Positions 6,890 to 32,837 are shown, counted from the stretch's first letter. The stretch is 124,000 nucleotides of DNA from Octopus vulgaris (GCA_951406725.2 OX597818.1:27920001-28044000); one strand, 5' to 3'. Program-made: numbers and translations. Notes: a model not told the origin generated them from the sequence alone.

Positions 6890-7201
6890 ATGATAATAGG
6901 AATCTTTACCCAAGTTCTGAAACACCAAATGCCATAAAGGATAAAAAATTCACATTGAAATGTAAAACAATAGGTACTGGTACTACAGTAATTTGGTATA
7001 CTGGAAATGGAACAGTTATTGCTAAATACATTGGATCATTGAACCAAAATATTGTTAAATATTTTGGTAAACGCCAAGAAACTAGTTGCCAACATTCAAG
7101 CTGTACATTGAGTATAACCAGCATTAGTTTAGCTGAAGACAACATGGACATTATTTGCAAAGGCGGTTTCCATACAAGCAAGTATAGTATTACAGTATTT
7201 G
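6890..7201 (+). CDS. Receptor exon: Ig-like domain 1 (V/I-like)
   Basis: ttttag acceptor, G|gtaagt donor, 312 nt, phase 1-1; FTLKC...VIWY...CTLSITSISLAEDNMDIIC Ig pattern. Confidence 0.9.
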
Positions 7202-7689
7202 GTAAGTAATTATTTTTTGCACAGTTGTGTGATTTTATTCTATTATTCCTTTATTTATTTCAGTCATTAGACTGTGACCATACTAGGGCATTACTTGCAG
7301 GGTTTAGTCGAGTATGTGGACCCCAGTATTTTGAGTCTCTTATTTTTATTGGTCTCTTTTTACCAAACTGCTAAGTGACTGGAAAGTAAACATATCTACA
7401 ATGGTTGTAAAGTGGTAAGAAACAAACACTAAGTTGCACACACTTATACACATCAATAAATATACATAAATATACATCATCATCATCATCATCATCATCA
7501 TTGTCATCATCCCCACCATCATCACTTAATATCCATTTTCCATATTGGCATGGGTTAGATGGTTTGGGAAGAGATGGCACTCCAGAGGACTGAGCCAAGC
7601 TCTACTGTCTACTGGGTGCTTTTTATGTGACACCATCAGCAGTGATGTTGCCAAATAACTTGGCATTTGAGGAAATCTATTTCCTGTGT

Positions 7690-9092
7690 ATTTGGGGATG
7701 GTCATGTTGCCCATTTAGCCAATGAAAACACACGTACTATATATTTGGTGTTCACTTGCTTCAGCTTTATTTTATAGTAATTGTATTTTGGCCAGAATTC
7801 TTTTGTCACATTTCTGTGACCTCATCAGTGGTCCTTTGCTTTCTTCTTTCTTTTTCATCTCTCCTTACTAATGACCTGCCATTTTGTATTCTTGTTGTAG
7901 GAGGTGGCTTTGTGCTAGGTGATGAGAGGCCAGATTATGAATAGAGGGACAGAAATAGGTGTCTTACTGTAGAGGAGATACATGGCTACCTCACATGGGA
8001 TAGAAGAGAGAGAAAAGATGGTGAAGAATATGTGTTGTGGGGTACCCTCAAGTTACAGGTAGGTAGTAGGAGGACTGGATAAGGTGAGTGGGTGGGTAAG
8101 TTCATGAGAGTGCAAAAGAAAAATGAATGCAAGTAGAGGGAGGGAATGTGAAGAAGATATGTTGTTGAGAAGGAATATATTCATCAGAAGTAGATTGTGT
8201 GCAAGGAAATTCATGAGATTTGATAGGAGAGTGGGAGATAAACGGGAAGGGAATGCAATGAGAGGTGAACTTGAGTGAAGGGAATGGGTGTTAGGAAGAT
8301 GAGTTATTGGGAAGATATTTGTCAGAGACAGATTCTGAGCAGGGGTGTAGGTATAAACATTTCTTTGGGGCCTCAATTTTACCTACATGAACAGATCTTA
8401 TCAAGCACAGCAAATCCTCTGTAAGGCTCAATGTCTTAAGGCCCCTTTGTACCAATTTGTTCCACAGGTTCCATCCACATATAGCAATTGGTACTTCTTT
8501 ATGCTGCTCTTCTCATAAATATGCACTAACATGACCATGCCAGTGCAGTCTCCTCTCTTACACACTACATTTTATTCCTTTTATACCCAATTTTTCTGTC
8601 AACACATTTCTACTTTGTTGTATATTCACACTGACATTGTACATCCACCAGAATATAGTAGCTTCATTTCTGTCTAGCCTTTACATGACCTCTGCATTCA
8701 TAGCCATGTGGTATAGCTATTCCTAAACAAGCATCATAAATCTGCCATTCACTCTGAGCAAGAGGCCCTTTCTAACCAACAAAGAAATAGCTCTCTAAAC
8801 TTTCTGTAGCCAGTTCTTATTCTAACTACTACACTTTAAGAGTACCCTTCTCCACTGCTAATTAGATCACTTAGGTTACAGAAACTACCTTCTACCACTA
8901 AGGTTGTTGTATTTGGGGATGACCCTGTTGCCAATTTAGCCAATGAAAACACATGCACTATATATTTGGTGTTCACTTGCTTCAGCTTTATTTTATAGTA
9001 ATTGTATTTTGGCCAGAGTTCTTTTGTCACATTTCTGTGACCTCATCAGTGGCCCTTTGCTTTCTTCTTTCTTTTTCATCTCTCCTTACTAA
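7690..9092 (-). repeat. Pair of ~180-nt direct repeats (about 7690-7870 and 8910-9092), each with a mutated hammerhead
   Basis: Minus-strand GGCCA-CTGATGA-GGTCAC-agaaat-GTGAC-AAAA-GAAC-TC-TGGCC at 9011-9054 and a near-identical motif at 7790-7833; GAAA changed to AAAA in both. Confidence 0.7.
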
Positions 9093-10509
9093 CGACCGGT
9101 CATTTCGTAGTCCTGTTCTATGTGTCTTTATTTGGATATGCGTATATCCTTGTGTGAGTCTATGTTTAGTAAATGTGTGTGTAGGAATGTGTATGGTATC
9201 TGCATTATCAATATCCCCTGTTTAATCATGTTTGTTTAATTTACTTTCATTTACTTTATTCATTTCCTTTTATCTACTTGCATTTTCATTTCTTTCTTTT
9301 TTTGTATTAATTTAATTTATTTTATTCTGTTTATGTATATAATTATTAAATTCCATTTGTTTATCTGTGTATTGTATTAGTTTCATATTATTATCAGTTT
9401 ATTCTGTCAAAGGTTGTGATGTGTGAGAGTGTATGTTAGTGTTCCATTCTAGTTTTCTATTTAGGCTAAGTTTATATTTTATTATGTGTGTAGCTTCCGT
9501 AATTTGTCTAAATATTGCTTCTGTTCTATGTGTGGACAAGATTTTAACTTCTATGTTGTTGAGTGAGCCCCATTGTTCCTACTCAGTGTGCTGGTACAGA
9601 ACCGATGAGCTCTTCTTTTCCTTAAGTTCCCTTCAATGCTCATTTACCTGCTATCTTATGCTCTGTGCTGTCTCCCCTACGTATATTGTTGTCTTGTTTC
9701 TGCACCGTTCCTCTGTACAGCTTATACTATAGACTACATTCCAAGCTTTTCAGTTTGTTTATGGGCTCAATCTACATACAATGCAGTTCATATCAGTACG
9801 GGGGTTCTGCTAAAAGGATAGGTTCTACCGATTAGGGATCTGATAGGGTTACCTGGCCTTACTACAACCTTAATTCTTAACTTGAGCTTGTCTAGAGTCC
9901 TTCTAAAGAATTTGTAATCATTACTCTACATTTAGGGATAGGAATAAATGTAACAGTTACAGGGCTTAGTAAATTAATTTGGGATCTAAAAGATCGCAAT
10001 AAACAATTTAATTTAGATAGGTTGATTCTCTCAATTTCGATACCTTATGACAAAGGCAAGGAATTCTGTCTTCTCTGTAATTCTGAATTATTTTTTATTC
10101 TTTTTTCTAAAAATCCCCTTGCAATGACGGTTATAGAGCGTGCATACCGATGTAAACGTTGGCAGAAACACACCTTTAGTTCATATAAGTGATTTCTATC
10201 ATTATATATAATTTAAACATTAATTTTCTTCTTATACTTCACATTCACTAGATATATATTTTTCCTAGTCTATATGGTTTTATTTAATATATATATAGTC
10301 ATATACTTCTCATTTATTTAGTTTTCCTTTACTTTATCCCTCCTCTTTCTATAGGCTACCTCTGACGTTATATCCTATAACGTTTTTTTGAAACAATATT
10401 AATAGCATTCAGTTAATCACTATACATATCCATCATTTTCTTTGCCACAAGTATTTAAATCTTTCTCTCTATGGTCATATGCATCAGTTAATATTTCTCT
10501 AGACCTATT

Positions 10510-10556
<47 letters not shown>

Positions 10557-12209
10557 TTTGATACTTTGATAGGTTTCGGCCATTATTGGCCCAGGCCATG
10601 TCTAACTTAATAGCACCACCTGGTGAAGTCTTTCAAGTCAGAATTTGGGCACTATGGCCCACTCAAGTAGAGAGTTATTGTTTACAGAGACATATCTGGG
10701 TGTAGGGGGTTTATCCGGGATTTCTTGAAGGAATCTGTCCAAAGACTTCTTGAACCCTATATATATATATATTTATTTATTTATCATCGATGATGATAAA
10801 TTGTACTTAATAAATGAATATATGGTATACTGTAATGTTTGTTTAATGATAGAAACTAGTACGGTTAAAATTTATAGATAAAAGAGTGATAGATATATAG
10901 GCATGTTTTATATATTACACATTTATGTACACAAAATATGTATACCACTTATGCATTTTATAGCATATTTACATACACTTATAAATAAATATACAAACAT
11001 GTGCACATAGAAACCAATACATTTATATGCACAAAATATATACACCTACATATGCATGCATTTTATATTATACATATACATATATCTTTTATCTTTAATA
11101 TTTTACTGGTTTCAGCCAAATGCTAGGGCCATGCTGGAGCATCATATTTCAGCGTGTTTGGATTTTCTCTCTATAGTGTTTTCAATTAAGTAGCAAGCTG
11201 GATGGAGCTGTTATTCTTTGTGCCTCCTGTAAATCAGACAAAAGGGTTATTGTACACACCAAAACATTCCTAGTGGAGAATGTACTACACACAAAGACAC
11301 AGAAATGAACTGGGAGAAGGAAGATATGGGGTAAAAAGATTCCATAATTCGGAATTGGTCTAGAGAAAGGTTAACTGATGCATATGACCGTAGAGAAAAA
11401 GATTTAGATACTTGTGGCAAAGATGACAACTGAGAATTTCTACAAAATAACCACAGTATTCCTCATAAGACAACATAGGTGCAGGTGTGGCTGCTTGGTT
11501 AAGAATTTTGCTTCCCAAACATAGAATTTCAGATTCAGTTTCACTGCCCAGCAACCTGGGCAAATGTCTTCTAGATTTATATTAGTGATTCTATTTTCTA
11601 CTTGCTACATCTATTATTCATCTGTAATATCAATGTATATTTTGTAGCCTTGGCCCTTGTTGCTAATGTATGATAGACCTGTAATGTATGATAGACGTTG
11701 TGGGCAGTTTTCTTGTAGAAACTGAGTTGCAATATCAATAAAATGTTTAATTTCGATGTCTACATAGTTGTCAATATCATTTATTGCGCCAGATACATAG
11801 TCAGTCTCTCTAATAGCAGTGGTGAGCCTGAGGATATCATCTGCATATCTGAAGAGAAAGCACAGGAGTAGCAAACTCTATGTACATTACTTTCCAGTTG
11901 GTCCATATATATATATGATATTTTGTTAAGTTAGCTCAATCAGTACAATGCCTTCTGATTATTGATTTCAATGAAGATAATACTGCTGTATTTTTCATCT
12001 AACTAAAAAATTTATAAACAACATAAAATTGCTGTCACCTCAGTCCTGCAAAAATAGATGTAAGTTAATGGTTATTTTTTCAACATATATTTATGTAAGG
12101 AAGCATGTAACAGATATACATATATACAAAGACACATAGATACATACAGACTAAAATGCAAACATTCATTCATTTATTTATATAATTTTGGTCAATTCTT
12201 CTATTTCAG

Positions 12210-12530
12210 TTTTACCAAAATCAGTCACAATCAAGGCTATTTCAGACACAGTTCCTGTGGAAAATCAGAACAAAAGTTATGAATGCCTTATTAAAGATGC
12301 CAAACCTAGATTTTCAGTTTTCTGGCTGATTACAAGGGAAAATGGAGCACAAGAAAATGCTACAATGAATATTTCAAACAATTCAAGCAAATCAGGAAAG
12401 CTGATCATTTTATCATCAAAATTGACATTAACTCTTCATAAGAGGTTTAAGGAATTACAGTGTGTTGCATATTTACTGGATAAAAGTGGAATTGTTAGTT
12501 ATTCAAAGAAACTAGATATGCTCATAAAAT
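12210..12530 (+). CDS. Receptor exon: Ig-like domain 2 (C2/CD80-like)
   Basis: tttcag acceptor, T|gtaagt donor, 321 nt, phase 1-1; SYECLIKDAKPRFSVFWL...SSKLTLTL...LQCVAY. Confidence 0.9.
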
Positions 12531-13425
12531 GTAAGTTTTTACTTTTTGTTTCTGTAAAGCACAAACAGCAGTTTTGTTCAAAATTTTTATGTGAAATATA
12601 TGTACATTTTAAAAATCATATCTAACACAATAATGCAATTACTCAACTTAAACAGTTTTGGAAAGATTTGTTTTTTGTTATACTGTATCACTGGTTGCTT
12701 ATGACTTAATAGAGCTCAAAATATATGAGGTCATTTCTGTAATTTGCTTAAATTTACTAAAGCATTTGCTTCATTGAGTTCTAATTTCTAGTGTAAGATA
12801 CATAACCAAAATATAAATGTGTTCTTTACCAATGTATGTATATTTTGTCAACTCCAAGCCTGCTCCCTTCTCTTTACCTTCAGCTTGTAATAACTTTGCA
12901 TTGTTGTTCTTGAGAATATTAGACATGTTTTTGTACACCTGTAGCTCACTTTAGTGTTGATATTTCTGAACAACCTTTGGGATATATGACCATTTGGTAA
13001 ATTTTTCTCTGTTTAGGAAGGAAAATGTAAAAAAAGAAAACCACGATTTATTCTGCAATGTTATATAGTGGATTATACCATGTCATAAGGTCTTTTCACT
13101 GTGAGTTTTGCATCATTGTTAGATGGTGCTGGTATATATTTTATTCTTTCTTTAGATTGCTTGCTTCATAGATTCTTGCTGCAGTACTCTATAGCCCTGT
13201 TGAAGATAGCATTAGAGGGAAGATAATGAGCTTGATGGCATTTAGTAGTTGGTTACATTCTATATGGATGTACAATATGGTGTTATTTGTTTCTTCTAAC
13301 AGCTTTTCAGTTTCAAGCTCAGGTTAAACAGAAAAACCAGAATGTTTACCATTGTAAGGTGTTAAATGGAATGTTGTAATTATTAATATTTGTATATAAT
13401 GTATTTGTATATGAGCACATAAATA

Positions 13426-13483
<58 letters not shown>

Positions 13484-14214
13484 GACGGGAATAAAAAGGT
13501 TGTAAATACACTGAGGGTGTATAAGAAGATTTATTACATTTAAATTGATTCACATTTGTACAATTTTCCAAAGAAAAATATCTGAGAAGCATGGAGCTGT
13601 GTTGCAAACTTTATCATTTCTGGTGTTACCAGCTCTCTTGTGTTTCATAATTGGTTTAGCATCTGGACAATCTCCACTTGTTGGGTGTTCACTGCTGTTG
13701 CCCAAGTTCCTTTGGTACAGTTCTGAAATTGATTAATATTTTTGGTCAGGATTGGGAATTTATAAGATATCCTTTTCAGCATACAAACTAATATTCATTG
13801 CACAATATAATTTTTATAAACTAAAATAGACCAATATGTCTAAAATTTTCCTGTTAGTTCAACTATCTGTCACGTTTGCTTGGAAGCCCAAAATAGTGGA
13901 GGGTAGTCGGTAATATTTGAACATCGAAAACTTCTTCTACTCCAAATGACTCAAACTGGAAAATCAGCAATAAAAAACCTCTGCATTTGAATTTTTCAAT
14001 GGAAAAAGCTTTGTGCACAGTATGTAACAGTAATTGAGATGACTGAGCATCAATATTCATTCAGAATTTGTGTAAGGTGTACTTGAGCTTCCCTGTATGC
14101 ACAAATTTCAATCATTGTGTAAGATGGCTGTTGAGCGTGAATAGTTATTACAATGGTACGTACGAGGTCATCAGTTTTTGTGGTGGTTAAGGGTCACTGG
14201 CTTTTGTTCAAAGA

Positions 14215-14830
14215 TCTAGGGTCTCCCTTGGTTGGATTTATTCCATCTCAATCACAGATTTTTCAATCAATTTTTTTTTAACTAAGCAGTTTGAAACTTA
14301 GGATACTGGTAGAATTTCTCATGTAGAACAAGGTTTACTCTGAATGTTTTGGACAAAATTTCATATTTTAGAAGATATTTTGAAACTACATATACGTCAA
14401 CAACAAAAAAACTTGCTGCGAACTCATTGCTCAATAGGTCTTTTAAACACTGGCATGCTTAATGTGTGTATAAAACACCAATGTCAGGTAAACAAATAAA
14501 TATATGTAAATATTTCTTCCTTCTTGGTGTTGATTCTTTGAACAGAATGATGACATTTAGTAGAGATGACCCGGAAGTTGTTCCTCTTCAATTACTATCA
14601 TAAACAGCAGTAGCTTTCTTGAACCGAATACACATAATTGATTGGTTGAAATTACCAAAATATGACAACTTTAGCATGAAATAACTTCTAAAATATGAAA
14701 TTTTGTCAAAAATGTTCAGAGTAAACCATGTTCTACGTGAGAAATTCTACCAGTATTCGAAGTTTCAAACTGTTTAGTTAAAAAAATTAATTAAAAATCT
14801 GTGACTGAGATGGAAAAGATCCCCTTGGTT
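14215..14830. mobile_element. Foldback MITE with ~170-nt inverted arms
   Basis: ccatctcaatcacagattttt...tagaatttctcatgtagaac mirrored by gttctacgtgagaaattctacc...aaaaatctgtgactgagatgg. Confidence 0.75.
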
Positions 14831-14949
14831 TTAGTAAAGAATGCTGTAAGTACAAATACAAATCACATACACATCTCCATCTCTACACATATACACACTC
14901 CCTGGTTATACAAGTCACTCACAAACTAAACAAACACCAATCCCACAGT

Positions 14950-15790
14950 ATTTATCTCATTTCATCTAGGTCATCCCATAGGATGCTCCAAGAGTATTTC
15001 CACACATTTTCCCTATTCATCTCGTCTTCCATAATGGTCCTTAGCTCCTGTACCCCTTCCATACCAGTATCCTCCTGTAAGTTGTAGATATAGGTCGTTT
15101 TCCTCCTTCCTCTCTTGGTTCTTCCTTCTATTGGTTTCCTGAGCACTAGCTTGTTAGCAATTTCATCAATGTGTCTGATGTAATGTCCAGCTAACCTCAT
15201 CCTTCTATGCTGTACCTTCAATATTACTTTTGATAGTCCCTGGTATAAGTTGGCGTTTGTTATATGACTCTTCCAGGAGAAATTGAGTACCATTCTAAGA
15301 ATCCTTGTATAACAACCGTCCAACTGGATCTTCACTGCTTTAGTGAGCATCCATGTTTTAGCCCCATATAGAAGAACAGACTCCACTGTTGCCAGAAACA
15401 AACTCACTTTCAATTTCCTTGCTAACTTTGAACTCCATACCTTTCTCAATTTATGGCATGTGTTCCAGGCAGGAGCTTTCCTTGCTACGATGTCTTTTTC
15501 AGTAATTTGTGCCCATGCACCAAGGTATTTGAAATTTTCAACTACCTTCAGTGACTTACCGTCTCTCCCTTTCACTGACCCAAGCATTTCATGGTTGAAT
15601 ACTTGCAGCTCTGTTTTGTTTGCATTACAGTACAATCCTACCTTCCCCGATTCCCACTCTAATCTGCTCAGCACCTCCAGTGCCTAATCTGTCCTCTTTG
15701 TGAGTAATGCCAGGTCATCAGTACAATCTAGGTTAATTACTGTTACTGCTTGATGCCATCTGCTTCTTTGCCTATGCAGTTTGAATCTCA
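14950..15790 (-). mobile_element. RTE-like LINE of a second family, RT C-terminal fragment
   Basis: ORF 14952-15674 (LKVVENFKYLGAW, TVESVLLYGAKTW, LDGCYTRILRMVL, RLAGH). Confidence 0.85.
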
Positions 15791-16165
15791 GATCTTCTTT
15801 CTTGCCTTCATACAAATTAAATTAATAATGATGATATTGATGTTGACAATGATGATAAAGATTATTCTCTGTTGCTTCCATCAATCTTTAGCAAAAAACC
15901 ACAATGGCTAGCTCAAATCCTGAGGTAAGAGCTGCAAGCACAGAGTGAAAGTAAGAAACAGTTTTAAAAAGAACTGACGTGATGCTTATGAATGTCAGTG
16001 CTTATACATTGCTTTGGTATTCTTTCGTTTTGTGTAGCTGATTTGTAAACAAACTACTTTGGTAATTTCTTTGAGCACATGTTGTCTTGTCAGTTGCTTG
16101 TTTGTTCTGTTTGACATGTGTAGAGGAGGAAGCTAATGGGCTGTACGTTTGTGTGTGCTTGTTAT

Positions 16166-16214
<49 letters not shown>

Positions 16215-16628: not shown

Positions 16629-16680
<52 letters not shown>

Positions 16681-16699
16681 TTAATCATCATCATCATCA

Positions 16700-16749
<50 letters not shown>

Positions 16750-19319: not shown

Positions 19320-20890
19320 TCTCCGGAAAACATGCTCTAGCATCCATTTTCAAGGACTATGAGATATTTTAATCTTGTGATCTATTGGGAGTGGGTGGCA
19401 GTGTAGCAGTGCGACTCTGGAAATTCTTAGATCTCCAAGTACAGGCTATCTTCTTGGACCCAGATAGTAGGGTGATGGCTCTTGATATGAATGACAGCAA
19501 AGGTGGTGCCTTTAGACTTTTAGTGGTTTATGCCCCAACAGGGGCTGGAAGGTCAGATTTCTTCAGGCATCTAGAAACATTCTTGGGAATGTTTTGCACT
19601 TTAGTACTAGTAGGGATTGGAATAGTATTTTGGATGCACGGATTAGTGAACTAGTTAAGCAGCAGTTAACAGGGACTATTGTCAACTATGCGTTGGCTCA
19701 CTCTGAAGAGAATGATTAGAGTAGAATTGATAGCATTTACCAAAGATTTAGCAATAGAAAGAAATAGATTAGAAGGATAACTAGTTTGTAAATCAGAAGT
19801 AGCTATTAGTAAAGGCACCGTGAGCGATGTGTTAGTGGTGAGAATGTCCCTTGACCATTTCTTTGAGGTAAAACATAAAGGATATGTTGTCAGAGCTAAG
19901 GCCTGTGTGCTAAAACATAAAGGAACTGAAGCCATCCAATGAGCATGAATGGTAGAAACACGACGTGGAAACAAAACCTCGATCAAGTTTTTGACGGATC
20001 AGGATGGACTCATGCTACTCAGTTCTGAACAGATGCATGCAGCTTTCCAGCAGTTCTTTGTATGGTTGTTTGGGGAGAGTGATGGGTCAACGATGGTATC
20101 AGACTTTACTTCATACACAGATGACCTACCATGGCTCTCAGTAATGGATGCGAAGTTCTGCATAAAGTTGATTACAGCCACTGAATTATGGGAGGTGATG
20201 AGCGATTGTATAAGTTGCAAATTGCCCAGTTTGGATGGTCTGCCCTACAAATTCTGTTTTCACATCAGATTTGTTTGGCAGATGTCTGCAATAACTAGCA
20301 GCAGAATGGTAGAATTTTTAGTGCCATTTGCTGGGATGTGATAACACTGCTGAGAAAGGACACTGATAATGGGGATATGCTAGGGCATTTTTGGCCCATA
20401 ACTCTGCTAAACACAGTGTTTAAAATTTTAGATAAGGTGTTAGCAAAAAGGTTAGCAATTGTCGTTGGTAGTATGGTTGGGATGGCACAAACATGCATAA
20501 TCCCAAGCAGGTCTATCCACAACAACTTCCACCTTATGCAATACATCATAGAGAGGGCTGGGACTAAAGCTGGTTTTGGTGGGTCCTGCACAATTTAGAT
20601 AATTCAGAAGCTTTTGAGAGGGTAGACCATCACTACTTGGAAGCTATCCTTAAAGCATCTGGTTTCAGTACCGTTTTCAGAGGCTGAATTACTGCTCAGT
20701 GATCAACATAAAAGGACATCTATCGGAACCGTTTAGTATCGCACGTTCAGTCTGTCTGGGCTGCTTGCTGTCACCTCTTCTGTATGTACTGGCTCTTGAA
20801 CCTCTGCTGCAGAAGTTGGAACAGTTAAGAGGGCTCCCTTTTGAAATTGGATTCAGAAAAGCAGTGTCAGTGTATGCAGACGACATCACT
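19320..20890 (+). mobile_element. Tx1/L1-like LINE remnant (endonuclease and RT fragments)
   Basis: FRLLVVYAPT; WPITLLNTVFKILDKVLAKRL; SVCLGCLLSPLLYVLALEPLL; VYADD at about 20870-20885. Confidence 0.85.
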
Positions 20891-20901: not shown

Positions 20902-21156
20902 ATTCTCCAGAAAAAGATACCATGACATTAAATGTTTTTGGAGGAAAAGTATATGCTGATACTCCAACCAAATTCCAGTGTAGTTGGAAAGGTGGTCATC
21001 CACCAACAAGTGTAACCCTGATGTATAAAAATATATCAAATACTAGTAAAGAAGATGAACTTAATGTGATACCTTCCAAAGCTCATCAAACAGTAAAGTG
21101 TCTGGGCATTCATATGGCAGCAAATGTGTCTTGTGAAAAGAATTTTACTATTTATT
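20902..21156 (+). CDS. Receptor exon: Ig-like domain 3 (C2-like), GC donor
   Basis: ttcatag acceptor; (Y)SPEKDT...FQCSWKGGHPPTSVTL...VKCLGIH...FTIY; the only phase-1 donor found is T|gcgagt; 255 nt. Confidence 0.8.
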
Positions 21157-22965: not shown

Positions 22966-23220
22966 ATCCTCCTCAAGTAAACATTCATATTTCAAATGAG
23001 ACAAATAATACTTTACAAATTAATTGCACTGTATTTGATGGAAATCCAGCAAATTATGAATACAAACTGAAGCAAAAATGGAGTAATACCACTAAGAATA
23101 CTTATAATATAAAAGTATTATCTATAAACAATCCTTCCTTCAGTAATACTGGTACATGGGAGTGTCATGTAAGCAATGAATATTTTCATGTGAGTAAATC
23201 CTCAAACTACAAAATTCCAG
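22966..23220 (+). CDS. Receptor exon: Ig-like domain 4 (not in ORF track), GC donor
   Basis: ttttttttaag acceptor; open frame (Y)PPQVNIHISNETNNTLQINCTVFDGNPANYEYKLKQKWSN...LSINNPSFSNTGTWECHVSNEYFHVSKSSNYKIP; CCAG|gcaagt donor; 255 nt, phase 1-1. Confidence 0.88.
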
Positions 23221-23786: not shown

Positions 23787-23830
<44 letters not shown>

Positions 23831-25219: not shown

Positions 25220-25528
25220 TGAAACCTATTTTCAGTTCAAGATCAAACAATCCCAAAACGAGAAATGTTGCAATTGGAGAATCTGTAATTTTCAAACAGT
25301 GTTTTTATTCCTATCCAAAATTTGATGTAAAATGGCAAAAGAATGAGAAATTAATTGACTCCAACAAATATTTAATAACTGATTATTTATCAAGTGAGTT
25401 TCCTTTCAAAGGAAGCTGTGCTAGTTTAAAGATAGAAGACATTAAAGATAATGATTTTGGCACCTATACCTTAACAGTGGAAAATACCATAGGGAAAAAA
25501 GTGATTATTTTTGCCATGAGACTTAAAG
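25220..25528 (+). CDS. Receptor exon: Ig-like domain 5 (I-set, membrane proximal)
   Basis: catcag acceptor, G|gtaagt donor, 309 nt; VAIGESVIFKQCFYSYPKFDVKWQKN...SLKIEDIKDNDFGTYTLTVENTIG. Confidence 0.92.
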
Positions 25529-26476
25529 GTAAGTTGTTACATGTTTGGAATTATTCTTTAGTTACTTAAAATATTGTTTCGTGCTATATGGAATTATTTA
25601 GAATTGATTAATTCATTGTGAAGTACTTAAGGTTCTGCTTTTAGTCCATGTGTTAGAATTAGCTGTATGTTATAAAGATGATTATCAATTTTAGCTTTCA
25701 TTCTTGTTTAAGCACTTTTAGATTTGTAGGTAAACATAATTTCTTTTTCAGAAATATTCTAGAAAATTGCTGGTCACAAAACTTCCACTGGCAAACCATT
25801 CCCTGAACTCTGATAATGAAGTTTTCTGGTCAATTAACTATTTATTCTTAGTTTGTTCATTTAAATATTTTCGACATAATTAGAGTGAAGTTGATTTCAA
25901 TGTGGTAAGATTTCTAGTTGAATTATGTGGACATAAAAATAACTTATAACATAGATGATAATTCTATCAGTATGGAAAGAACCAGAGTGCAGGAATTTGG
26001 CAGTGTTTGATGCTGTGGATCTCAAAATTTGCATAGCATCATACAGGTGGATGTATAAGGGCAAGCCATTTCTGTTTAATTACATATGTGATGGAAAGGA
26101 AAATGAAAGAGGAATGAAATGATGGTCTAATAAGGACACTCTGAGGAAAAAGTAGAAAGAAGCTTTTAGGTATGATCTGAAAACACTGAGCCTTATAATG
26201 CATTACTAGAATGCACTACAGAACATATTTATAGTATTTTTAACAAACACTTAGTGTTACAATGTTTGTAAAGAAATTGACTGTACAATATCTGATATAA
26301 AAAAAAGATGCACAACTGTATGTACATTTTATTGTTTTTGAAGCCTTCAAGTAGCAACTGTGTACCCCAACATCCATTGACCTTAGAATATGTGGCAAAT
26401 AATTAGTGAAAAATTCTTCATAACCCTTTATATTTTTAATGTATTAATGCAAGGTCTTTTTAATAAATCCTTTCAG

Positions 26477-26578
26477 AAATTATGGAAGTCCCTTTGAGAA
26501 TAATTATTGGTTGCACTGTAGGAATTGTATTATTAATAATTTTGGGGCTTCTTATTTATAAATGCCACAAAAAAAGAG
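26477..26578 (+). CDS. Receptor exon: transmembrane helix with basic stop-transfer
   Basis: tttcag acceptor, AG|gttggt donor; (E)IMEVPLRIIIGCTVGIVLLIILGLLIYKCHKKR; phase 1 in, phase 1 out. Confidence 0.88.
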
Positions 26579-27544
26579 GTTGGTATGTTTTACACATTAT
26601 AAAGGTTTGTTAATTAGGGATATATATTCTTAAAACTCTCCTGCCTGACCAGGCATGGTTAAACAGATGTTGAAAGTTGTGTATGTATGTGTGTCTGTGT
26701 TGTGTGACTCAATACATACATACATACATACATACATACATACATACATACATACATACATACATACATACATACATACATACATACATGCATGCATGCA
26801 TGCATGCATACATATTAAAAATTGTTCAGCATATCCCAAAACACCCTTCTTTCCACCAGCCTGTTCATCAGTCACAATGTTGTTTGATTCACAATGGTCC
26901 TGATTGAGGCAACATGTGTACAGTTTGTACATAATATTTAGGCAAGCAATGAGCCTGTAGCTTTCTGCCATCTCGGTGATTTCCTTTTTGGCCACAAGAT
27001 TTGTCCTTGTAGCAAGCAAATGTGGTATATCAGTCTGAACTTCCATAGTCCTTCTGAACATACATATCAATAGGTTTCTATAAAATGACAGCTTCTTGTA
27101 TCCATATTCGACTATTAGGTCCCTTCTAGGTGCCTTCCCATTCTGCAGTTTGCCTACTGCTATTGCAAAGGTTTCTGCATCAATTTTGTGTGCTTTACTG
27201 TAAGTGTTGGTACAGTATTCTCTCTCAGTTGTATTTAACCATGTTGAAATTCCTCTTTTCATTCCAAATTTTTGACCAGAATGATTGTAGATCTTGGGAG
27301 GGAGCTATATATATATATATATATATATATATAAGATATGAAATATAAGCCATGCTGTGTAGCCACCCTACTCTTTCTTCCTAGTAAATCTACATGCCCT
27401 TCTTGCATACTTGCATACCCCCTTTACCTCTCCTCATTGTTGGCCCTTAATTTGGATGTTGTATGGGATTAAGGAAATTGTAATTCATTGAATAAACTAT
27501 ATACCAAAGTTCTGTGCAAGCTGACATGTGCTTGTGCAGATCTT

Positions 27545-30500
27545 CTTTTCAGGTGTTGACAAAGGTCCTACAACGACTGCTTTCCAACTATCACTCCTGA
27601 ATACACAATTTTATGACCACTACCATCAACATTGGTGCAATGAAAGGAAGGTCTGGTGAGATTATTGAAATGCTGGAGCATCACCATGTCGATGTGGTAG
27701 TGTGCAAGAAGTAAGATGGAGAGGAGCCTCTACTAGATTTCTCATGGGTAAGAAACAGAGGTTCAAATTCTTCTGGGTAGGCAGGAGTGATGGAGTGGGT
27801 AGTGTTGGCACACTTTTAGCAGAAAATTAAGTAGAAAAGGTAATTGAATTAGTCAGAATATGTGATAGGGTTATTGAGCTGAGACTTATCATAGATAAAT
27901 TAACAGTTACATTTATCTCTGTATATGTTCCACTGTCTGAGCTGGTTGATGACCAGAAGGACCAATTTTACGAGGTTCTTCTGCAGACTACCTCAGTGAC
28001 AAATGACAGTGACTTAGTTATTGTAGCTGGTGACAACAGTTAAGGTGCATGGCTCAGTGGTTAGAGCATCGAGCTTATGATCGTGAGGTTGTGAGTTGGA
28101 CCGGGCTACGTATTGTGTTCTTGAGCAAGACACTTTATTTCACGTTGCTCCAGTTCACTCAGCTGTAGAAATGAGTTGCGACATCACAGGTGCCAAGCTG
28201 TATCGGCCCTTGCCTTTCCCTTGGATAACATTGGTGGTGTGGAGAGGGGAGGCTGGTATGCATGGGTGACTGCTGGTCTTCCATAAACAACCTTGCCCGG
28301 ACTTGTAACTGGGAGGGTAGTCATGACTGAAGGGGGTCTCAACGACTACAATGAACATACTGGGCAGCATGGTGCACATGGTGGTTATAGCTTTGGTTCT
28401 AGGAATGAGGAGGGAACAAGGCTGCTGGAGTTCCGTGATGCAAATAATCTCATGATCTGCAACACTAGCTCAGAAAATCAGACTGCTACCTAATCACTTA
28501 TCAGTCTGATGGGCACATAAGCCAGATTGATTACCCCCTCACTAGACAACAAAATAGACAGATACTTGCAAATGCAAAGTGTTTCCTTGGTGGAGAGTGT
28601 ACAACCCAATATAGGTTACTAGTAAGTGACTTCAGAATTAGAGCTCGAATGACTCTGAGAAATAAACCATTTTGGAAAAGAAGATTATGGAAGCTCAAAG
28701 ACCCAGCAAACTGACAGAAATTTAGAGATAGTCTAATGGAAGCTTTTGACAAAAGAGAGGTAAGTTGGGAACATATAGCTTAGTGAACAATTGGAAGTTC
28801 TTGCAGGACAAACTACCAAAGTCTGCTGGCCAATTCTGTGGTTGGTGTAAAGTTCCATCTAGGCTTATGGTGATATGATGGTGAGTCAAAAAGGTAGGCA
28901 GTCCGATCAAAGCAAAGAGACTGTCCTGGAAAGACTGGAAAAATAGTGGAAGCAAAGAATTATATCAGGAAGCAAGAAGGGAAGCTAGGTGACAGGTTTA
29001 AATAGCAAAAGGAATAGCAGAAGGTAAGAAGTTTACCAATGTTTTACAGCATAAGGATCAGAGGCGTGAGGTGTTCAGGATTGCAAAGCAGTGTATCAGA
29101 GAGAATAGAGATGTGGTGAGTGAGAAATGTGTGTGAATGGATAATGGTACATTTGCTCTTAGTAACTCAGAGAAGAAAGATGCATGGAAATGCCACTATG
29201 AAAGGTTACTAAATGTGGAAAATGCATGGGAGGAGAGACTTTCAAATGTTGAATCAACTGAGAGACCAGCATTAGTATTGATACCAGTATAATAGATAAG
29301 GCAATTAAGAATATGAAGACAGGGAAAGCCATCAGAAATCACTGCCGAGATAATTAAAATATCTAGCAGTGTAGGATATGGCCTAGCCAACCATATAGTT
29401 AATCAGATTATTCAGGAAAGCATCATCCCCAATGACTGATGTAGTAGTATTATAGTTAGCTCATACAAGGATAAAGGTGATGTCTTAGAAAGAAACAACT
29501 ACAGAGGTATCAAACTGCTGGACCAGATCATAAAACTTACAGAAAGTTTTATAGCTCAGTTGATTAGGAATAGAATTATATTAAATGAGATTTAATTTAG
29601 TTTTGTATCTAGGAAGAGTACCACAGATGCCATTTTCCTAGTGAGGCAGCTGCAGGAAAGTATTTGGTTAAAGTAAGCCATTGTACTTGGCTTTTGTTGA
29701 CCTGGAGAAAACTTTTGACAGAGTTTCCCACTCTCTCATCTGGTGGTCTCTAAGAAAGTTAGGAGTAGATGAGTTAATTGTTAGAGCTTTACAAGCCATA
29801 TACGGTGGTGTTGTCAGTAAGGTGAGAGTTGGCCATAAATACAGTGATGAGCTTAGTGTACAAGTAGGGGTTCATAAGAGTTCAGTTCTCAGTCCATTCT
29901 TATTCATCATAGTCCTCCAGATCATAACAGAGGAATTCAAAACTGGATGCTATTGACCTTGCTCTTATTGCAGATTCTGTAGCAGAATTGGAGAAGAAAT
30001 TCCCGGTATGGAAATAAAACTTAGAATAAAAGGGTCTTAAAGTTAATCTAGCAAAAATCAAAGTCGTTGTCAGCAAGAAAGCAGATAAGACTTTCTTTCC
30101 ATCAGGTAAATGGCCCAGTTCAGTATGTAGGAAAGGAGTTGGAAGTTATTCCATTTGCTGCATATAGCTTATGGATACATAAGAGGTGCAGTGGAATCAC
30201 AGGCAGGTTAACAGATAAAGTTGTCTCAAATGCCCAGGATGCTTTCTCGCTTGAGGTTGTAGATAGTTTTTGTTACCTAGGTGACCAAATTAGTAATGGC
30301 AGAGGATGTTCTGAAAGTATTGTTTAGAATAAGAATAAGGCGGAGAAAGTTCAGAGAGCTATTACCTCTGTTGGCAACAAAAAGACTCTATTTCAGAGTG
30401 AAAGGTAGATTGTATGATGCTTGTGTGCAAACAGCTATACTTCATAGTAGTGAGACATGGGCTCTGAACGCAGAAGAGATGCATAGACTAGAGAGGAATG

Positions 30501-30830
30501 AAAGCAGTATGCTGTGTTAGATATGCAACATCAGTGTCTATGTACAATAAAGCGCAAATGTGCTGAGAGAAAAGTTGTGAATTAGAGAAGTCAGATGCAA
30601 TATGCAAGAGAGAAGGCAACGTTGGTTTGGACATGTGGTGCATATCAATGATGACAGCTGTATAAAGAAGTACTGATCACTGAAAGTAGATGGCACCCAT
30701 AGAAGAGGGAGACCCAGGGAGACATGGGATGAGGTGGTAAGGACCAATCTCAGGATGCTGAGCTTCACAGAGGAAATGACAATGGCCTGAGATGTCTGGC
30801 AATATGAGGTTCTTGAGAAGATACCACCCA
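27545..30830 (+). mobile_element. RTE LINE, degraded, with a SINE inserted at about 28042-28315
   Basis: APE and RT remnants (YLAFVDLEKTFDRV, VVDSFCYLGDQIS) with many stops. Confidence 0.88.
28042..28315 (+). mobile_element. tRNA-derived SINE family 3
   Basis: tggctcagtggttagagc head, ttgagcaagacactt body; partial copy at about 45820. Confidence 0.7.
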
Positions 30831-32228
30831 CTTCAGCAAAACCGAGTCCTAGAAGTGCTGTGTGTTCTACCTACATGTAACAATAAAGCTTTTCACACAC
30901 CCTACCTCAACTACACCTTTTCTCTTCCTCACATTTCTTCTTTCCATGCACTATGCTAATCTCTCACTCTCCAATTCTGTCATCACTTCTCTGCTCACTG
31001 TATCATTGCTATTCTGCAGTCCCCCCCCTCTTTATTTACCCAAGTTTCCCCAGTAACTGTCTTCCCTACCCCATACTCTTTACATTTTTGTGAAGACTAG
31101 TCCCTACTCACACTCCTTTGACAATATCCTACTCTTTTTTATGATTTTCAGTCATGAAAATCTGTCATCACACTCACACATTTTTTTTTTTTGTGTGTAT
31201 GTATGTTTATATTATAATGGAAAAAACTGCTTTAAAAGTACTAAAAGAAAGCAATTATTAAAGGGTTTACCATCTGGAAATATCTTTATAAATCCATGTT
31301 CTAAGAAATTTCCTATAATTTCAATTACTCAAGTTTCTTGAATTTTTTAAAATTCCAATTTCTCGCAGATTTAAATATTCATTGCATTCACTGTGTCCAA
31401 TTCATGAATTTAAATATTCATTGCATTCACTGTGGAGTATTCCTTTCTCATTTGCAAGGTCTCTCACTTTCTCTTTTAAGTTTTCATTTCCTATTTGGAA
31501 AACCAACAGTTTATTCTGTTAATGTATATGTAATTTATTATTTATTGAATGAAACATTTTTAGATACCCGTTTAATCTTTGAATACAGGATAGCTGTAAG
31601 AAGAGCCTAGAAAGTTGGGTAGTTTCTATTAGAAGATGAAGAGAAAAAAATATACATACATATATAACAATGAATGAGTCATTTTATATGGAATATTTAA
31701 TTTCTCCATCTTACATATATTTGATTAACAAAAGGTGATATTTTGTTATCTAATGAAAACACACACTTAAAATCTTCAAAGATGTGTAAACTTTATGTGT
31801 AATGTTTCTGGATTGTTGAATTAAATATTATTGGGGAGATAACACTTAACTGTGTTCAATTGGGGAAGCAGTTTATATTCAGTATTTGATGAGAGAAAGC
31901 TACAGAAAAAAAACCACCCAGAAAAGGAGATGGACTGGAGATTAAATATTGCCAGAGAGAGAAATAAAACACTTTTTGATTAACAATTTTATTGTTTTTT
32001 ATCAGTTGTCTTTCTTCCTTGCCAGTTAATGTTAGTGGGAAGAGGTACAAACACACACAAAATAAAACTAATGACTAATATATATTGTGTATACATCTAC
32101 ATACACCCAAACATATGCATCAGTATGCGCATATACCTCCAAATATACATACATATATCCATACACACATATACTCTACTGGGGCAACCACTACACACAG
32201 ATATAGGTGTCTTGCAGTAGAGAAAGTA

Positions 32229-32443
32229 TTGGGTTGTCCAGAAAGTTCATGCTGATTTATAGTAGCTTACCTTTTGACTTACCCTCCCAGGCACCTCAAT
32301 TTTGGGAAGAGGGTATTTTCAAGTTAAAGGAAAGATGGTGCAACAAAATGGTTCATATTTAGTTGATTAAAAATGTAATGGCAAGTGTTTATTGACCTTT
32401 TTCTTTCCTTTAAAAATTGGAACGAACTTTCCAGACAACCCAA
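32229..32443. mobile_element. Mariner-type MITE
   Basis: 20-nt TIR TTGGGTTGTC(CA/TG)GAAAGTTC with TA duplicated on both sides. Confidence 0.85.
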
Positions 32444-32818
32444 TACTTTGGTTCCTTCAGTTGAAGAGAGAGAGAGAGAGATAGAAAGAGAAGAGAGAGA
32501 GTGGAGAGAAGAAATGTTGGTGTGATGGTGCGAGGTGCATTCAAGTGACATAGAACCAAAAGAGTGGATGGGTAAGTTTGTGAGACTGCAAAAGAAGAGT
32601 GGGAGATGAATGGGAAGAACTGTATCTCATGTGGGTGTTAAGAGAGATTGGAAAAGCTGTTTCTAAATCTCACCATTATGGAAAACTGGAGATAAAATTT
32701 CTTCTGATAAAATTATGCCATAACTAATGATAGTTATGTTTGAAATAGAAAATTGTTACTCTTTCTAGAAGTGTTTGATATTGACAATTTTTATACAAAT
32801 CATGTTTACTTTTTTCAG

Positions 32819-32837
32819 GTGTGAAACACAATAAAAA
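32819..32837 (+). CDS. Receptor juxtamembrane micro-exon (19 nt; GVKHNK)
   Basis: Strong ttttttcag acceptor and gtaagt donor; open only in the phase-1 reading that follows the TM exon; ends at phase 2. Confidence 0.65.

What the first reader, a model, noticed from the sequence alone, without database searches (positions are those of the whole stretch)
6890..32837. Divergent 5-Ig type I receptor: candidate lineage-specific immune, adhesion or allorecognition receptor
Five single-exon Ig domains (V/I, C2, C2, C2/I, I), then TM and a tyrosine-only tail with no enzymatic domain. I recognise no orthologue. The layout resembles metazoan Ig receptors with Tyr-motif tails (SIRP/Siglec/CEACAM, cnidarian Alr proteins), but homology to those is not shown by the sequence.
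Basis: partly seen in the sequence, partly recalled or inferred. Interest (0 to 1): 0.7.

Follow-up and report, generated by a model that had tools for sequence, protein, structure and literature searches.

The report
Octopus Ig receptor with cassette tail
The five immunoglobulin-domain exons are real, but they are only the middle of a roughly 100-kb octopus gene for an uncharacterised, cephalopod-only cell-surface receptor whose signalling tail is built from small, interchangeable tyrosine-motif exons.

Summary
All are phase 1 with usable splice sites. The gene is much larger than 6890-32837.

The window is collinear, introns included (87-96% nt identity), with Octopus bimaculoides LOC106874069, an 'uncharacterized protein' with 8 annotated isoforms. 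By that synteny, the signal-peptide exon and a sixth, N-terminal Ig exon lie just upstream of window base 1. The cytoplasmic tail continues through 11 more mini-exons to 86,026, or to 100,676 with an alternative end.

So a one-to-one orthologue exists, but of an unstudied gene. The family was found only in coleoid cephalopods (Octopus, Argonauta, Sepia). It sits in a tandem cluster in O. bimaculoides and evolves fast but under constraint (dN/dS 0.52, p=0.002).

It is not Kirrel, nephrin or an ITIM receptor by the tests run. Its tail is an array of seven frame-neutral cassette exons carrying YxN, YxxM and YxxI motifs. The orthologue's annotated isoforms differ by these cassettes, and two cassettes are intact here but dead in O. 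bimaculoides.

Best reading: a recognition receptor that signals through phosphotyrosine docking sites, with output tuned by cassette choice. An immune role is plausible but untested. Allorecognition has no support.

The parts
6890..7201 (+). Ig1 exon (V/I-like; second Ig domain of the full protein)
   Evidence: Phase 1-1, 312 nt, ttttag|...|gtaagt. 83% aa identity to P0001 residues 130-242. Pfam Ig_3 is weak, E 0.019. Cys24-Cys89 pair plus an extra Cys pair.
12210..12530 (+). Ig2 exon (CD80-like C2-set)
   Evidence: Phase 1-1, 321 nt. Pfam PF08205 C2-set_2, 23.9 bits against a cut-off of 21.
20902..21156 (+). Ig3 exon (C2-like); GC donor (T|gcgagt) and a LINE fragment 13 nt upstream of the acceptor
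   Evidence: 255 nt, phase 1-1. The orthologue has T|gtgagt and a T-rich tract upstream. No Pfam hit when searched alone. AF2 gives a 7-strand sandwich, pLDDT 77; Foldseek matches are mostly C2 Ig domains at TM about 0.6.
22966..23220 (+). Ig4 exon (Ig_3/C2); GC donor G|gcaagt, shared with the orthologue
25220..25528 (+). Ig5 exon (I-set, membrane-proximal)
   Evidence: Pfam I-set, E 8e-11, 42 bits. 91% aa identity to P0001.
26477..26578 (+). Transmembrane exon (VPLRIIIGCTVGIVLLIILGLLIY, then KCHKKRG)
   Evidence: The basic stretch after the helix indicates type I topology (inference).
32819..32837 (+).
   Evidence: Matches P0001 'RGVKHNKK'. Read-through of the donor meets a stop at TAA 32838-32840.
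49766..49842 (+). Tail exon T2 (KDAVGTNPLEDVHMVSIHGINASLAG)
65449..65490 (+). Cassette C, 42 nt (DVDGGYATILSEPS; YxxI)
   Evidence: Aligned to the O. bimaculoides cassette at L001 67292-67336, which is used in some annotated isoforms and not others.
71613..71654 (+). Cassette B1, 42 nt (DMDDTYVNFSKKPD; YxN)
   Evidence: Consensus splice sites here. In O. bimaculoides a 7-bp deletion removes the acceptor.
72658..72717 (+). Cassette A1, 60 nt (VEDQYAEISDPKYLCMRLP; YAEI + YxxM)
77304..77363 (+). Cassette A2, 60 nt (VEKQYAEISEPKCLEMKQR; second Tyr replaced by Cys)
77608..77649 (+). Cassette B2, 42 nt (MDGDYVNISKKTG; YxN)
84353..84412 (+). Cassette A3, 60 nt (VEEQSAEVSEPKYLEMEKR; YxxM)
   Evidence: Intact here. 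Dead in O. bimaculoides: acceptor AG>TG, 5-bp deletion, donor GT>GA.
84652..84693 (+). Cassette B3, 42 nt (MDGTYINVSKKPA; YxN)
85983..86026 (+). Long-form last coding exon (GKIRQNLWDDLIYV, stop)
   Evidence: 86% aa identity to the C-terminus of P0001.
100669..100676 (+). Alternative last coding exon (DY-stop; DYQ-stop in O. bimaculoides isoforms X2/X6/X7)
77215..77755 (+). 0.54-kb [A exon - intron - B exon] module. Tandem copy at 84264-84799 (80.7% identity); partial copies at 72528-72961 and 71527-71705
   Evidence: Self-blastn.

Best explanation
The window holds most of one gene of about 100 kb: the orthologue, in an Octopus species close to but distinct from O. bimaculoides, of LOC106874069. 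It encodes a glycosylated type I membrane receptor of a coleoid-cephalopod-restricted, tandemly clustered Ig-superfamily family. The ectodomain has six Ig domains (Ig0, outside the window, plus Ig1-Ig5), followed by one TM helix and a disordered tail with no enzymatic domain. The tail is encoded by two constant mini-exons, seven symmetric phase-1 cassette exons of 42 or 60 nt, and two alternative ends. Each cassette carries one or two tyrosine motifs. Type B is DMDGxY[VI]N[VI]SKKP (YxN). Type A is VE[DE]QYAEISxPKYLxM (YAEI, YxxM). Type C is GGYATI (YxxI). Proposed mechanism (inferred, not shown): the membrane-distal Ig domains bind a ligand on a cell or microbe. Clustering then allows Src-family kinases to phosphorylate the acid-flanked tyrosines. 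The phosphotyrosines recruit SH2 proteins: Grb2/Drk-type on pYxN, PI3K-p85-type on pYxxM, and Src- or Syk-type on pYAEI and ITAM-like pairs. This drives an activating or scaffolding signal for cytoskeleton, adhesion or engulfment rather than an inhibitory one. Alternative splicing of the cassettes sets how many and which docking sites a given isoform has. I favour an immune-type recognition role (haemocyte or barrier epithelium) over developmental adhesion, but only weakly.
For: SHOWN. Exon anatomy and one open frame of 666 codons through 15 exons without cassette C, and of 680 codons through all 16 exons. Collinearity with L001, introns included, so orthology. Purifying selection: dS 0.110, dN 0.057, omega 0.52, Fisher p=0.002. 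Eight annotated O. bimaculoides isoforms that differ only by cassettes C, A2 and B2 and by the terminal exon. Every one of the 256 cassette and end combinations keeps the frame. A tandem 0.54-kb A+B module duplication. Cassette birth and death between the two species. Paralogues at 34.43, 34.86 and 34.99 Mb of one O. bimaculoides chromosome. Family-wide, tails hold 4-30 Tyr. The A and B modules found by their defining motifs share flanks around those motifs, B as DMD[GD]xYxNxSKKP and A as SEP[KR]YLxM, and paralogue tails hold 0-9 YxN and 0-10 YxxM/L modules. ITIM/ITSM occur 0-3 times per protein. The cuttlefish relative P0045 also has repeated PQYIN[VA] and YAEI motifs. Ig0 is by far the most divergent domain among paralogues (46% mean identity against 71-81% for Ig1-Ig5), as expected of a specificity domain. 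INFERRED from established SH2 specificities (pYxN for Grb2, pYxxM for p85, pYEEI-like for Src family; my own knowledge). Precedents: nephrin tyrosines recruit p85 and Nck (PMC12203975), and the oyster 5-Ig receptor CgIgR recruits Syk through an ITAM (PMC6994640).
Against: No expression, phosphorylation, ligand or tissue data of any kind. SH2 partners are predicted from 3-4-residue motifs only. Several motif tyrosines are not conserved even between the two orthologues: A1 is QYAEI here but QDAEI in O. bimaculoides, A2 is YLEM there but CLEM here, and A3 lacks the first Tyr. Individual sites are therefore dispensable, and tail omega (0.54) is not significantly below 1 on its own (p=0.20). The strict ITAM consensus appears only at the hypothetical C+A1, C+A2 and C+B2 junctions and is absent from the orthologue's C+A1 junction. 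Use of B1 and A3 in this species is unproven. The Ig3 exon has weakened splice signals here. The immune-versus-adhesion preference rests on family dynamics, which neural or reproductive recognition families also show.
Confidence: 0.55

Rival explanations
1. Cell-cell adhesion or recognition molecule derived from the Kirrel/nephrin (IRM) stock. It would act in neural wiring, muscle or epithelial junctions, with the tail organising actin as nephrin and Neph1 do.
For: P0001 aligns collinearly, domain for domain (Ig1 to Ig5 and into the TM), with the genuine cuttlefish Kirrel P0057 at 22% identity over 480 residues, E 2e-14. P0057 is confirmed as Kirrel by PDB hits. Ig2 is a CD80-like C2-set_2 domain, as in Kirrel D2. 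One paralogue is auto-named 'syg-2-like'. The nearest non-cephalopod named hits are nephrin and hemicentin-like. Nephrin tails recruit p85 and Nck through tyrosines (PMC12203975).
Against: The family profile hits no Kirrel, SYG-1, Rst or SYG-2 chain in the PDB at E<=0.01, whereas the true Kirrel hits them at 1e-27 to 1e-40. Cephalopods keep a separate conserved Kirrel. There is an extra N-terminal Ig and no FN3 domain. The protein ends in IYV, not the S/T-x-V PDZ ligand. Tandem expansion, omega 0.5 and a hypervariable distal domain are unusual for core junctional proteins.
Confidence: 0.28
2. Inhibitory ITIM/ITSM receptor of the SIRP/Siglec/CEACAM1/PECAM-1 type that recruits SHP phosphatases.
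For: The multi-Ig type I layout. A tail made of small alternatively spliced tyrosine-bearing exons closely parallels PECAM-1, which has 6 Ig domains and a tail encoded by exons 9-16, with exons 10-16 alternatively spliced (PMC2132561).
Against: No match to [SIVL]xYxx[IVL] or TxYxx[VI] anywhere in the window's tail, and 0-3 per protein across the family. The tyrosines are preceded by acidic or Gly residues, not the hydrophobic -2 residue of an ITIM.
Confidence: 0.05
3. Allorecognition determinant analogous to Hydractinia Alr or Botryllus fuhc-linked receptors.
For: A clustered, fast-evolving Ig family with the most variable domain at the tip.
Against: Octopuses are solitary and non-colonial, with no known fusion or rejection biology (my own knowledge). 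Omega is below 1 in every domain. No polymorphism data. No sequence homology to Alr or fester was detected.
Confidence: 0.03
4. A decaying or non-functional copy (pseudogene) in this species.
For: The Ig3 donor has mutated from GT to GC. A LINE fragment has replaced the polypyrimidine tract 13 nt upstream of the Ig3 acceptor. Several motif tyrosines are lost.
Against: All 17 coding exons are open with usable splice sites. Omega is 0.52, significantly below 1 (p=0.002). Two cassettes are better preserved here than in O. bimaculoides. Skipping of Ig3 would stay in frame (255 nt).
Confidence: 0.05

Closest known systems
Octopus bimaculoides LOC106874069 ('uncharacterized protein', isoforms X1-X8, XP_052824255-263) and its paralogues (LOC106874055, LOC128247863/4, LOC106879981; O. 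sinensis/vulgaris LOC115212114/6; Argonauta hians; Acanthosepion pharaonis CAE1168733)
   Same: One-to-one syntenic orthologue with the same exon order, phases and cassettes. 77-94% aa identity per exon and 87-96% intron identity.
   Different: A different species (dS about 0.11). The window has two extra intact cassettes (B1, A3), a GC donor on Ig3, and DY-stop instead of DYQ-stop at the alternative end. No member has a described function, and no paper mentions these loci.
PECAM-1 / CD31 (vertebrates)
   Same: Six Ig-like domains and a cytoplasmic tail encoded by many small exons that are alternatively spliced. Single tyrosines in individual exons change signalling and ligand specificity (PMC2132561). 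One Ig domain per exon is my own knowledge of the Kirschbaum 1994 gene structure, not taken from that paper.
   Different: No detectable sequence homology. PECAM-1 tyrosines are ITIMs that dock SHP-2; here the motifs are YxN, YxxM and YxxI with acidic flanks. PECAM-1 is single-copy; this family is tandemly expanded, with duplicated cassette modules.
Kirrel / IrreC-Roughest / SYG-1 (IRM family) and nephrin / SYG-2
   Same: Ig1-Ig5 plus the TM align collinearly with the five Ig domains of cuttlefish Kirrel (22% identity). There is a C2-set_2 second domain. The tail is tyrosine-based and enzyme-free; nephrin's recruits p85 and Nck (PMC12203975).
   Different: Fails sequence-level membership. It has an extra N-terminal Ig, no FN3 and no S/T-x-V end. 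A bona fide Kirrel coexists in cephalopods.
Oyster CgIgR (five Ig, TM, ITAM tail; haemocyte receptor that binds bacteria and recruits Syk; PMC6994640)
   Same: A molluscan multi-Ig type I receptor with a tyrosine-motif activating tail. It shows that such receptors work in mollusc immunity.
   Different: CgIgR has one classical ITAM. Here a strict ITAM arises only at certain cassette junctions, and the dominant motifs are YxN and YxxM.

Membership tests
Ig-superfamily type I membrane receptor (generic) | Ig-fold ectodomain repeats | tested here: met
   Pfam C2-set_2, Ig_3 and I-set. Cys pairs in all five domains. AF2 and Foldseek support an Ig-like fold for Ig3.
Ig-superfamily type I membrane receptor (generic) | N-terminal signal peptide and a single TM helix with the tail inside | tested here: met
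   The TM exon followed by KCHKKRG lies in the window. The signal-peptide exon lies outside the window and is seen only in the orthologue (MEFNLLYLKYLFIIQFFC, L001 13664).
Cephalopod LOC106874069 orthogroup | Conserved synteny and exon structure with the reference gene | tested here: met
   Collinear blastn over window 1-102580 against L001 17964-100999. Exon-by-exon correspondence.
Kirrel / IrreC / SYG-1 | Significant sequence similarity of D1-D2 to solved Kirrel, Rst or SYG-1 domains | tested here: not met
   The family profile has no such PDB hit at E<=0.01. The positive control, cuttlefish Kirrel P0057, hits 4ofd at 8e-40 and 4of8 at 3e-37.
Kirrel / IrreC / SYG-1 | Exactly five Ig domains and a C-terminal S/T-x-V PDZ ligand | tested here: not met
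   The orthologue has six Ig domains. The C-terminus is ...DDLIYV or ...DY.
Kirrel / IrreC / SYG-1 | Distant common origin (collinear domain-for-domain alignment) | tested here: inconclusive
   22% identity over 480 residues, E 2e-14 in a pairwise comparison. Multi-Ig proteins often align this well.
Nephrin / SYG-2 | Eight or more Ig domains followed by an FN3 domain | tested here: not met
   No FN3 in Pfam scans or in family members.
ITIM/ITSM inhibitory receptors (SIRP-alpha, Siglec, CEACAM1, PECAM-1) | [SIVL]xYxx[IVL] or TxYxx[VI] in the tail | tested here: not met
   Zero matches in the window's full tail. 0-3 per protein in family members.
ITAM activating receptors (e.g. oyster CgIgR, CEACAM3) | [DE]xxYxx[LI]x(6-12)Yxx[LI], as defined in PMC6994640 | tested here: inconclusive
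   Absent from the all-exon tail. Created at the C+A1, C+A2 or C+B2 junctions in 56 of 256 hypothetical isoforms. Lost in the orthologue's C+A1 (QDAEI). Present in paralogues P0003 and P0034, against 0.1-2% of shuffled tails.
Allorecognition receptors (Hydractinia Alr, Botryllus fester) | Extreme allelic polymorphism of the distal domain | not testable with these tools
   Only one haplotype is available. Between-species omega is below 1 in all domains.

The most novel reading that the evidence does not exclude
A coleoid-specific cluster of immune-type Ig receptors in which signalling, not only recognition, is diversified. Each gene carries a tandem array of frame-neutral mini-exon cassettes, each holding a single SH2-docking tyrosine motif. 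Alternative splicing (up to 256 in-frame tails from this one gene) and rapid cassette birth and death between species would then set the number and kind of docking sites, and would create or destroy ITAM-like pairs at exon junctions.
Probability: 0.25. Interest if true: 0.7.

Novelty: new variant of a known kind. Interest (0 to 1): 0.45.

Why it matters
Cephalopod cell-surface recognition and immune receptors are almost unknown. The genome papers my literature searches returned did not describe an Ig-receptor expansion, and to my knowledge cephalopod genome papers emphasise protocadherins and zinc fingers. This locus defines an uncharacterised, cephalopod-only Ig receptor family in a tandem cluster with a hypervariable distal domain. 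It also has an unusually explicit genomic design for tuning phosphotyrosine signalling: duplicated, symmetric cassette exons with one motif each. That gives a concrete, testable entry point into how octopus cells sense partners or microbes. It is also a natural example of signalling-tail modularity comparable to PECAM-1, but amplified by exon duplication. It does not overturn anything: multi-Ig receptors with tyrosine tails and lineage-specific expansions are common in invertebrates.

Tried and rejected
(1) A GT donor for Ig3. The only in-frame GT choices either truncate the G strand (21132) or give phase 2 (21160). The orthologue showed that the true junction is at 21156, which is a GC donor here.

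(2) Searching the window for the N-terminal 130 residues of the orthologue found nothing. Synteny places them upstream of base 1.

(3) PDB sequence searches with the ectodomain and with the family profile gave only generic I-set hits such as titin and contactin.

(4) AlphaFold2 of full-length P0001 with 12 sequences gave pLDDT 43, which is unusable, so it was not used for a fold search.

I did not try to get round this and folded only the contiguous Ig3 exon translation.

(6) A tail-only homology search found the A and B modules only inside the family. It gives no sign of tail sharing with other receptor types, though short motifs have little power at that database size.

(7) Literature searches for the LOC identifiers and for octopus or cephalopod Ig-receptor expansions found nothing specific.

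(8) Other genes in the window: every ORF of 150 aa or more is LINE- or repeat-derived, and there are no further Ig exons.

(9) Positive selection on Ig1 versus Ig5: omega is 0.33 against 0.37, with no domain above 1. Counts are small.

Full report
**What the window is.** The sequence is AT-rich (32-41% GC) and full of microsatellites and LINE fragments. Proteins translated from its exons match only cephalopod proteins. The best match is Octopus bimaculoides LOC106874069, annotated 'uncharacterized protein', with eight isoforms of 751-785 aa.

I fetched that gene's locus (L001, chromosome CM046605.1, 34.85-34.96 Mb). Window 1-102,580 is collinear with L001 17,964-100,999. Introns are included, mostly at 87-96% nucleotide identity, and are interrupted by lineage-specific transposon insertions. 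Synonymous divergence is 0.11.

The window is therefore the one-to-one orthologue in a different but closely related Octopus species. A very divergent haplotype cannot be formally excluded. However, divergence beyond the last coding exon (81-93% identity) is in the same range as inside the gene, which argues for a species difference.

**Checking the observation.** On the + strand there are five exons that each encode one Ig domain:
- Ig1: 6890-7201
- Ig2: 12210-12530
- Ig3: 20902-21156
- Ig4: 22966-23220
- Ig5: 25220-25528

A transmembrane exon follows at 26477-26578, then a 19-nt mini-exon at 32819-32837. All Ig and TM exons are phase 1-1 and a multiple of three in length, the classic Ig-superfamily gene layout. 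Each domain has the B/F-strand cysteine pair, and the 483-residue ectodomain has 14 N-glycosylation sequons.

Pfam support varies by domain. Ig2 (CD80-like C2-set_2) and Ig5 (I-set, E 8e-11) pass Pfam's own threshold. Ig4 (Ig_3) falls just below it. Ig1 is weak and Ig3 has no hit. Folded alone with 17 relatives, Ig3 gives a seven-strand beta-sandwich (pLDDT 77). Its best PDB matches are mostly C2-type Ig domains (CEACAM5/6, Tyro3, PVR, Fc receptors, SYG-2 D4) at TM about 0.6, though none reaches E<=0.001.

**Where the observation falls short.** There are two problems with the extent.
- In O. bimaculoides, exon 1, the signal-peptide exon and an additional N-terminal Ig exon (Ig0) lie at L001 10,001-17,642. 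That is about 320 bp before the point matching window base 1, and nothing in the window matches residues 1-130. The protein therefore has six Ig domains; '5-Ig' comes from the window's edge.
- The tail does not stop at 32837. tblastn with family members, followed by inspection of splice sites, located tail exon T2 (49766-49842), seven cassette exons and two last exons.

The cassettes and ends are:
- C: 65449-65490
- B1: 71613-71654
- A1: 72658-72717
- A2: 77304-77363
- B2: 77608-77649
- A3: 84353-84412
- B3: 84652-84693
- long last exon with a stop: 85983-86026
- alternative last exon: 100669-100676

Joining all exons except cassette C gives a 666-codon open frame with no internal stop. With C included it is 680 codons.

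Two donors are GC. The one after Ig4 is shared with the annotated O. bimaculoides gene. The one after Ig3 is GT in O. bimaculoides.

**Is the gene alive?** Against the orthologue, over 614 codons, dS is 0.110, dN is 0.057 and omega is 0.52. This is significantly below 1 (Fisher p=0.002). That means real but relaxed constraint.

By domain, omega is 0.33 (Ig1), 0.70 (Ig2), 0.47 (Ig3), 0.84 (Ig4) and 0.37 (Ig5). For the tail it is 0.54. No domain exceeds 1, and counts per domain are small.

There is one caveat. In this species a LINE reverse-transcriptase fragment now abuts the Ig3 acceptor at -13, replacing the T-rich tract seen in O. bimaculoides. Together with the GC donor this could weaken inclusion of Ig3. 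Skipping would stay in frame.

**The family.** Word-indexed and exhaustive profile searches find members in the following taxa:
- O. bimaculoides, O. sinensis and O. vulgaris
- Argonauta hians (38% identity to P0001)
- the cuttlefish Acanthosepion pharaonis (P0045, E 1.6e-43)

After that there is a gap down to generic Ig-superfamily proteins (insect nephrin, clam hemicentin-like) at E about 1e-15 to 1e-12.

Members vary from about five to eight Ig domains. Some paralogues have two extra Ig domains between Ig3 and Ig4; these are absent here and in the orthologue.

In O. bimaculoides at least three members lie within 0.6 Mb on one chromosome, at 34.43, 34.86 and 34.99 Mb. If the two genomes stay collinear and the neighbouring gene has the same orientation, the next paralogue lies about 23 kb beyond this window. 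No second copy is present in the window.

Among paralogues the N-terminal Ig0 is far more divergent (46% mean identity) than Ig1-Ig5 (71-81%). That is the pattern expected if the distal domain sets ligand specificity. This domain is not in the window.

**The tail.** The cassettes are of three kinds:
- Type B (42 nt): DMDGxY[VI]N[VI]SKKP
- Type A (60 nt): VE[DE]QYAEISxPKYLxM
- Type C (42 nt): DVDGGYATILSEPS

All are phase 1 on both sides, so any subset can be spliced without changing frame. I enumerated all 256 combinations of seven cassettes and two ends, and every one is open. This is not only theoretical. The eight annotated O. bimaculoides isoforms differ precisely by cassettes C, A2 and B2 and by the choice of end.

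The A+B pair sits in a 0.54-kb module that has been tandemly duplicated. Window 77215-77755 matches 84264-84799 at 80.7%, and there are older partial copies at 71.5 and 72.5 kb.

Cassettes are gained and lost quickly. B1 and A3 have consensus splice sites and open frames here. In O. bimaculoides B1 has lost its acceptor through a 7-bp deletion. A3 there has AG>TG at the acceptor, a 5-bp deletion and GT>GA at the donor.

Across paralogues the tail holds 4-30 tyrosines and 0-9 YxN and 0-10 YxxM/L modules. One O. sinensis paralogue has a 430-residue tail of about ten A+B repeats. The modules found by their defining motifs share flanks around those motifs: B as DMD[GD]xYxNxSKKP and A as SEP[KR]YLxM. 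The cuttlefish relative also repeats PQYIN[VA] and has YAEI, so the motif classes are old.

Canonical ITIM/ITSM motifs are absent from this gene and rare in the family.

A strict ITAM consensus, as written in PMC6994640, does not occur in the all-exon tail. It is formed when C is spliced directly to A1, A2 or B2; for example C+A1 gives DGGYATILSEPSTVEDQYAEI. That is 56 of the 256 combinations. Two paralogues carry such a motif, against 0.1-2% of shuffled tails. The O. bimaculoides orthologue has Asp instead of the second Tyr at the C+A1 junction. An ITAM is therefore not a conserved feature.

**How it most likely works.**

Shown:
- the anatomy
- the orthology
- the constraint
- the clustering
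- the cassette structure
- annotated isoforms in the sister species that differ only by these cassettes and by the terminal exon

Inferred:
- It is a type I surface glycoprotein whose distal Ig domains bind a ligand.
- Its acid-flanked tyrosines are substrates of Src-family kinases.
- The phosphotyrosines dock SH2 proteins. From established SH2 specificities (my own knowledge), pYxN suits Grb2/Drk, pYxxM suits PI3K p85, and pY-A-E-I resembles the Src-family optimum pYEEI.

That predicts an activating or scaffolding output, with valency and partner mix set by cassette choice. There are precedents for each element:
- Nephrin tyrosines recruit p85 and Nck (PMC12203975).
- The oyster five-Ig receptor CgIgR binds bacteria and recruits Syk through its tail (PMC6994640).
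- PECAM-1 has six Ig domains and a tail encoded by exons 9-16. Exons 10-16 are alternatively spliced, and a single exon-14 tyrosine changes ligand specificity and SHP-2 docking (PMC2132561).

I give the mechanism about 0.55.

As for the biological role, the following resemble immune-type multigene receptor families:
- tandem expansion
- fast evolution
- a hypervariable tip domain
- variable tails

Neural and reproductive recognition families share these traits. I favour an immune-type role only weakly (about 0.4) over IRM-like adhesion (about 0.3).

**Comparison with known families.**

*Kirrel/IrreC/SYG-1.* P0001 aligns domain for domain with a cuttlefish protein (P0057) over 480 residues at 22% identity. 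I verified P0057 as a true Kirrel: it hits PDB Kirrel1 at 8e-40 and Roughest at 3e-37. The family profile, however, finds no Kirrel or SYG chain at all. The protein also has six Ig domains, lacks the S/T-x-V end, and coexists with the real Kirrel. Membership is not met; a distant common origin remains possible.

*Nephrin/SYG-2.* There is no FN3 domain, so membership is not met.

*ITIM receptors (SIRP, Siglec, CEACAM1).* The motif test is not met.

*ITAM receptors.* Inconclusive.

*Alr or fester allorecognition.* There is no homology and no biological rationale in a solitary animal. Polymorphism is untestable here.

The closest analogue by design is PECAM-1, with no sequence relationship.

**Novelty and verdict.** The gene is already predicted in a sister genome but is unnamed and unstudied. 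I found no paper that mentions these loci and none describing such a family in cephalopods.

It is a new, lineage-restricted variant of a very familiar kind, the Ig-superfamily receptor with a tyrosine tail. Its distinctive feature is the duplicated, frame-neutral cassette array that encodes the signalling tail. It is of moderate interest: a good handle on cephalopod cell recognition and a neat case of modular tail evolution, but not a surprise in kind.

Noticed in passing
window 19385-20888 (+), abutting Ig3 exon at 20902: A LINE reverse-transcriptase fragment, cut off inside its YADD box, ends 13 nt upstream of the Ig3 acceptor. It replaces the T-rich polypyrimidine tract present in O. bimaculoides. 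Because the element is truncated at its 3' end, a deletion is more likely than a simple insertion. Combined with the GT>GC donor change on the same exon, it may promote in-frame skipping of Ig3 in this species.
   Followed up: partly
window 34701-37249 (-) and 50542-53053 (+): Two non-LTR retrotransposon copies with long open frames sit inside the tail introns. One has a 438-aa endonuclease-type ORF plus RT pieces. The other has a 537-aa RT ORF preceded by a 188-aa ORF. They may be recently active elements. Further RT fragments lie at 14952-15674 (-), 26630-27262 (-) and 27669-30517 (+).
   Followed up: no
window 75009-75451; related copies near 33.8-34.9 kb, 40.3-41.4 kb, 79.8-80.3 kb and 109.3-110.1 kb: A dispersed repeat family has an internal 66-nt (132-nt) tandem array (6.7 copies, 74-80% matches). 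It produces long spurious ORFs such as 74651-75490 (-) and 109424-110107 (+). The same element occurs several times in the O. bimaculoides locus.
   Followed up: partly
window 32838-32840: If the donor after mini-exon T1 is not used, the frame adds one more codon (K) and then meets TAA at 32838-32840. Intron retention would therefore give a receptor with a tail of only about 14 residues (KCHKKRGVKHNKK).
   Followed up: no
window 100669-100676 vs L001 98382-98394: The alternative last coding exon reads DY-stop here but DYQ-stop in O. bimaculoides (CAG>TAG). The short-form C-terminus is therefore one residue shorter in this species.
   Followed up: yes
L001 (O. bimaculoides) 77391-77423 and 86132-86186: The orthologous copies of cassettes B1 and A3 are dead exons in O. 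bimaculoides, through loss of the acceptor, a frameshift and loss of the donor, while they are intact in the window. This is a clear case of cassette-exon turnover between close species.
   Followed up: yes
family paralogues P0011, P0014, P0015 (not in window): Several database 'proteins' of this family are chimeric gene models that run from Ig exons into LINE RT or helitron-helicase sequence. P0014 residues 375-431 match RT fragments at four places in the window. Automated annotations of this cluster are unreliable.
   Followed up: partly
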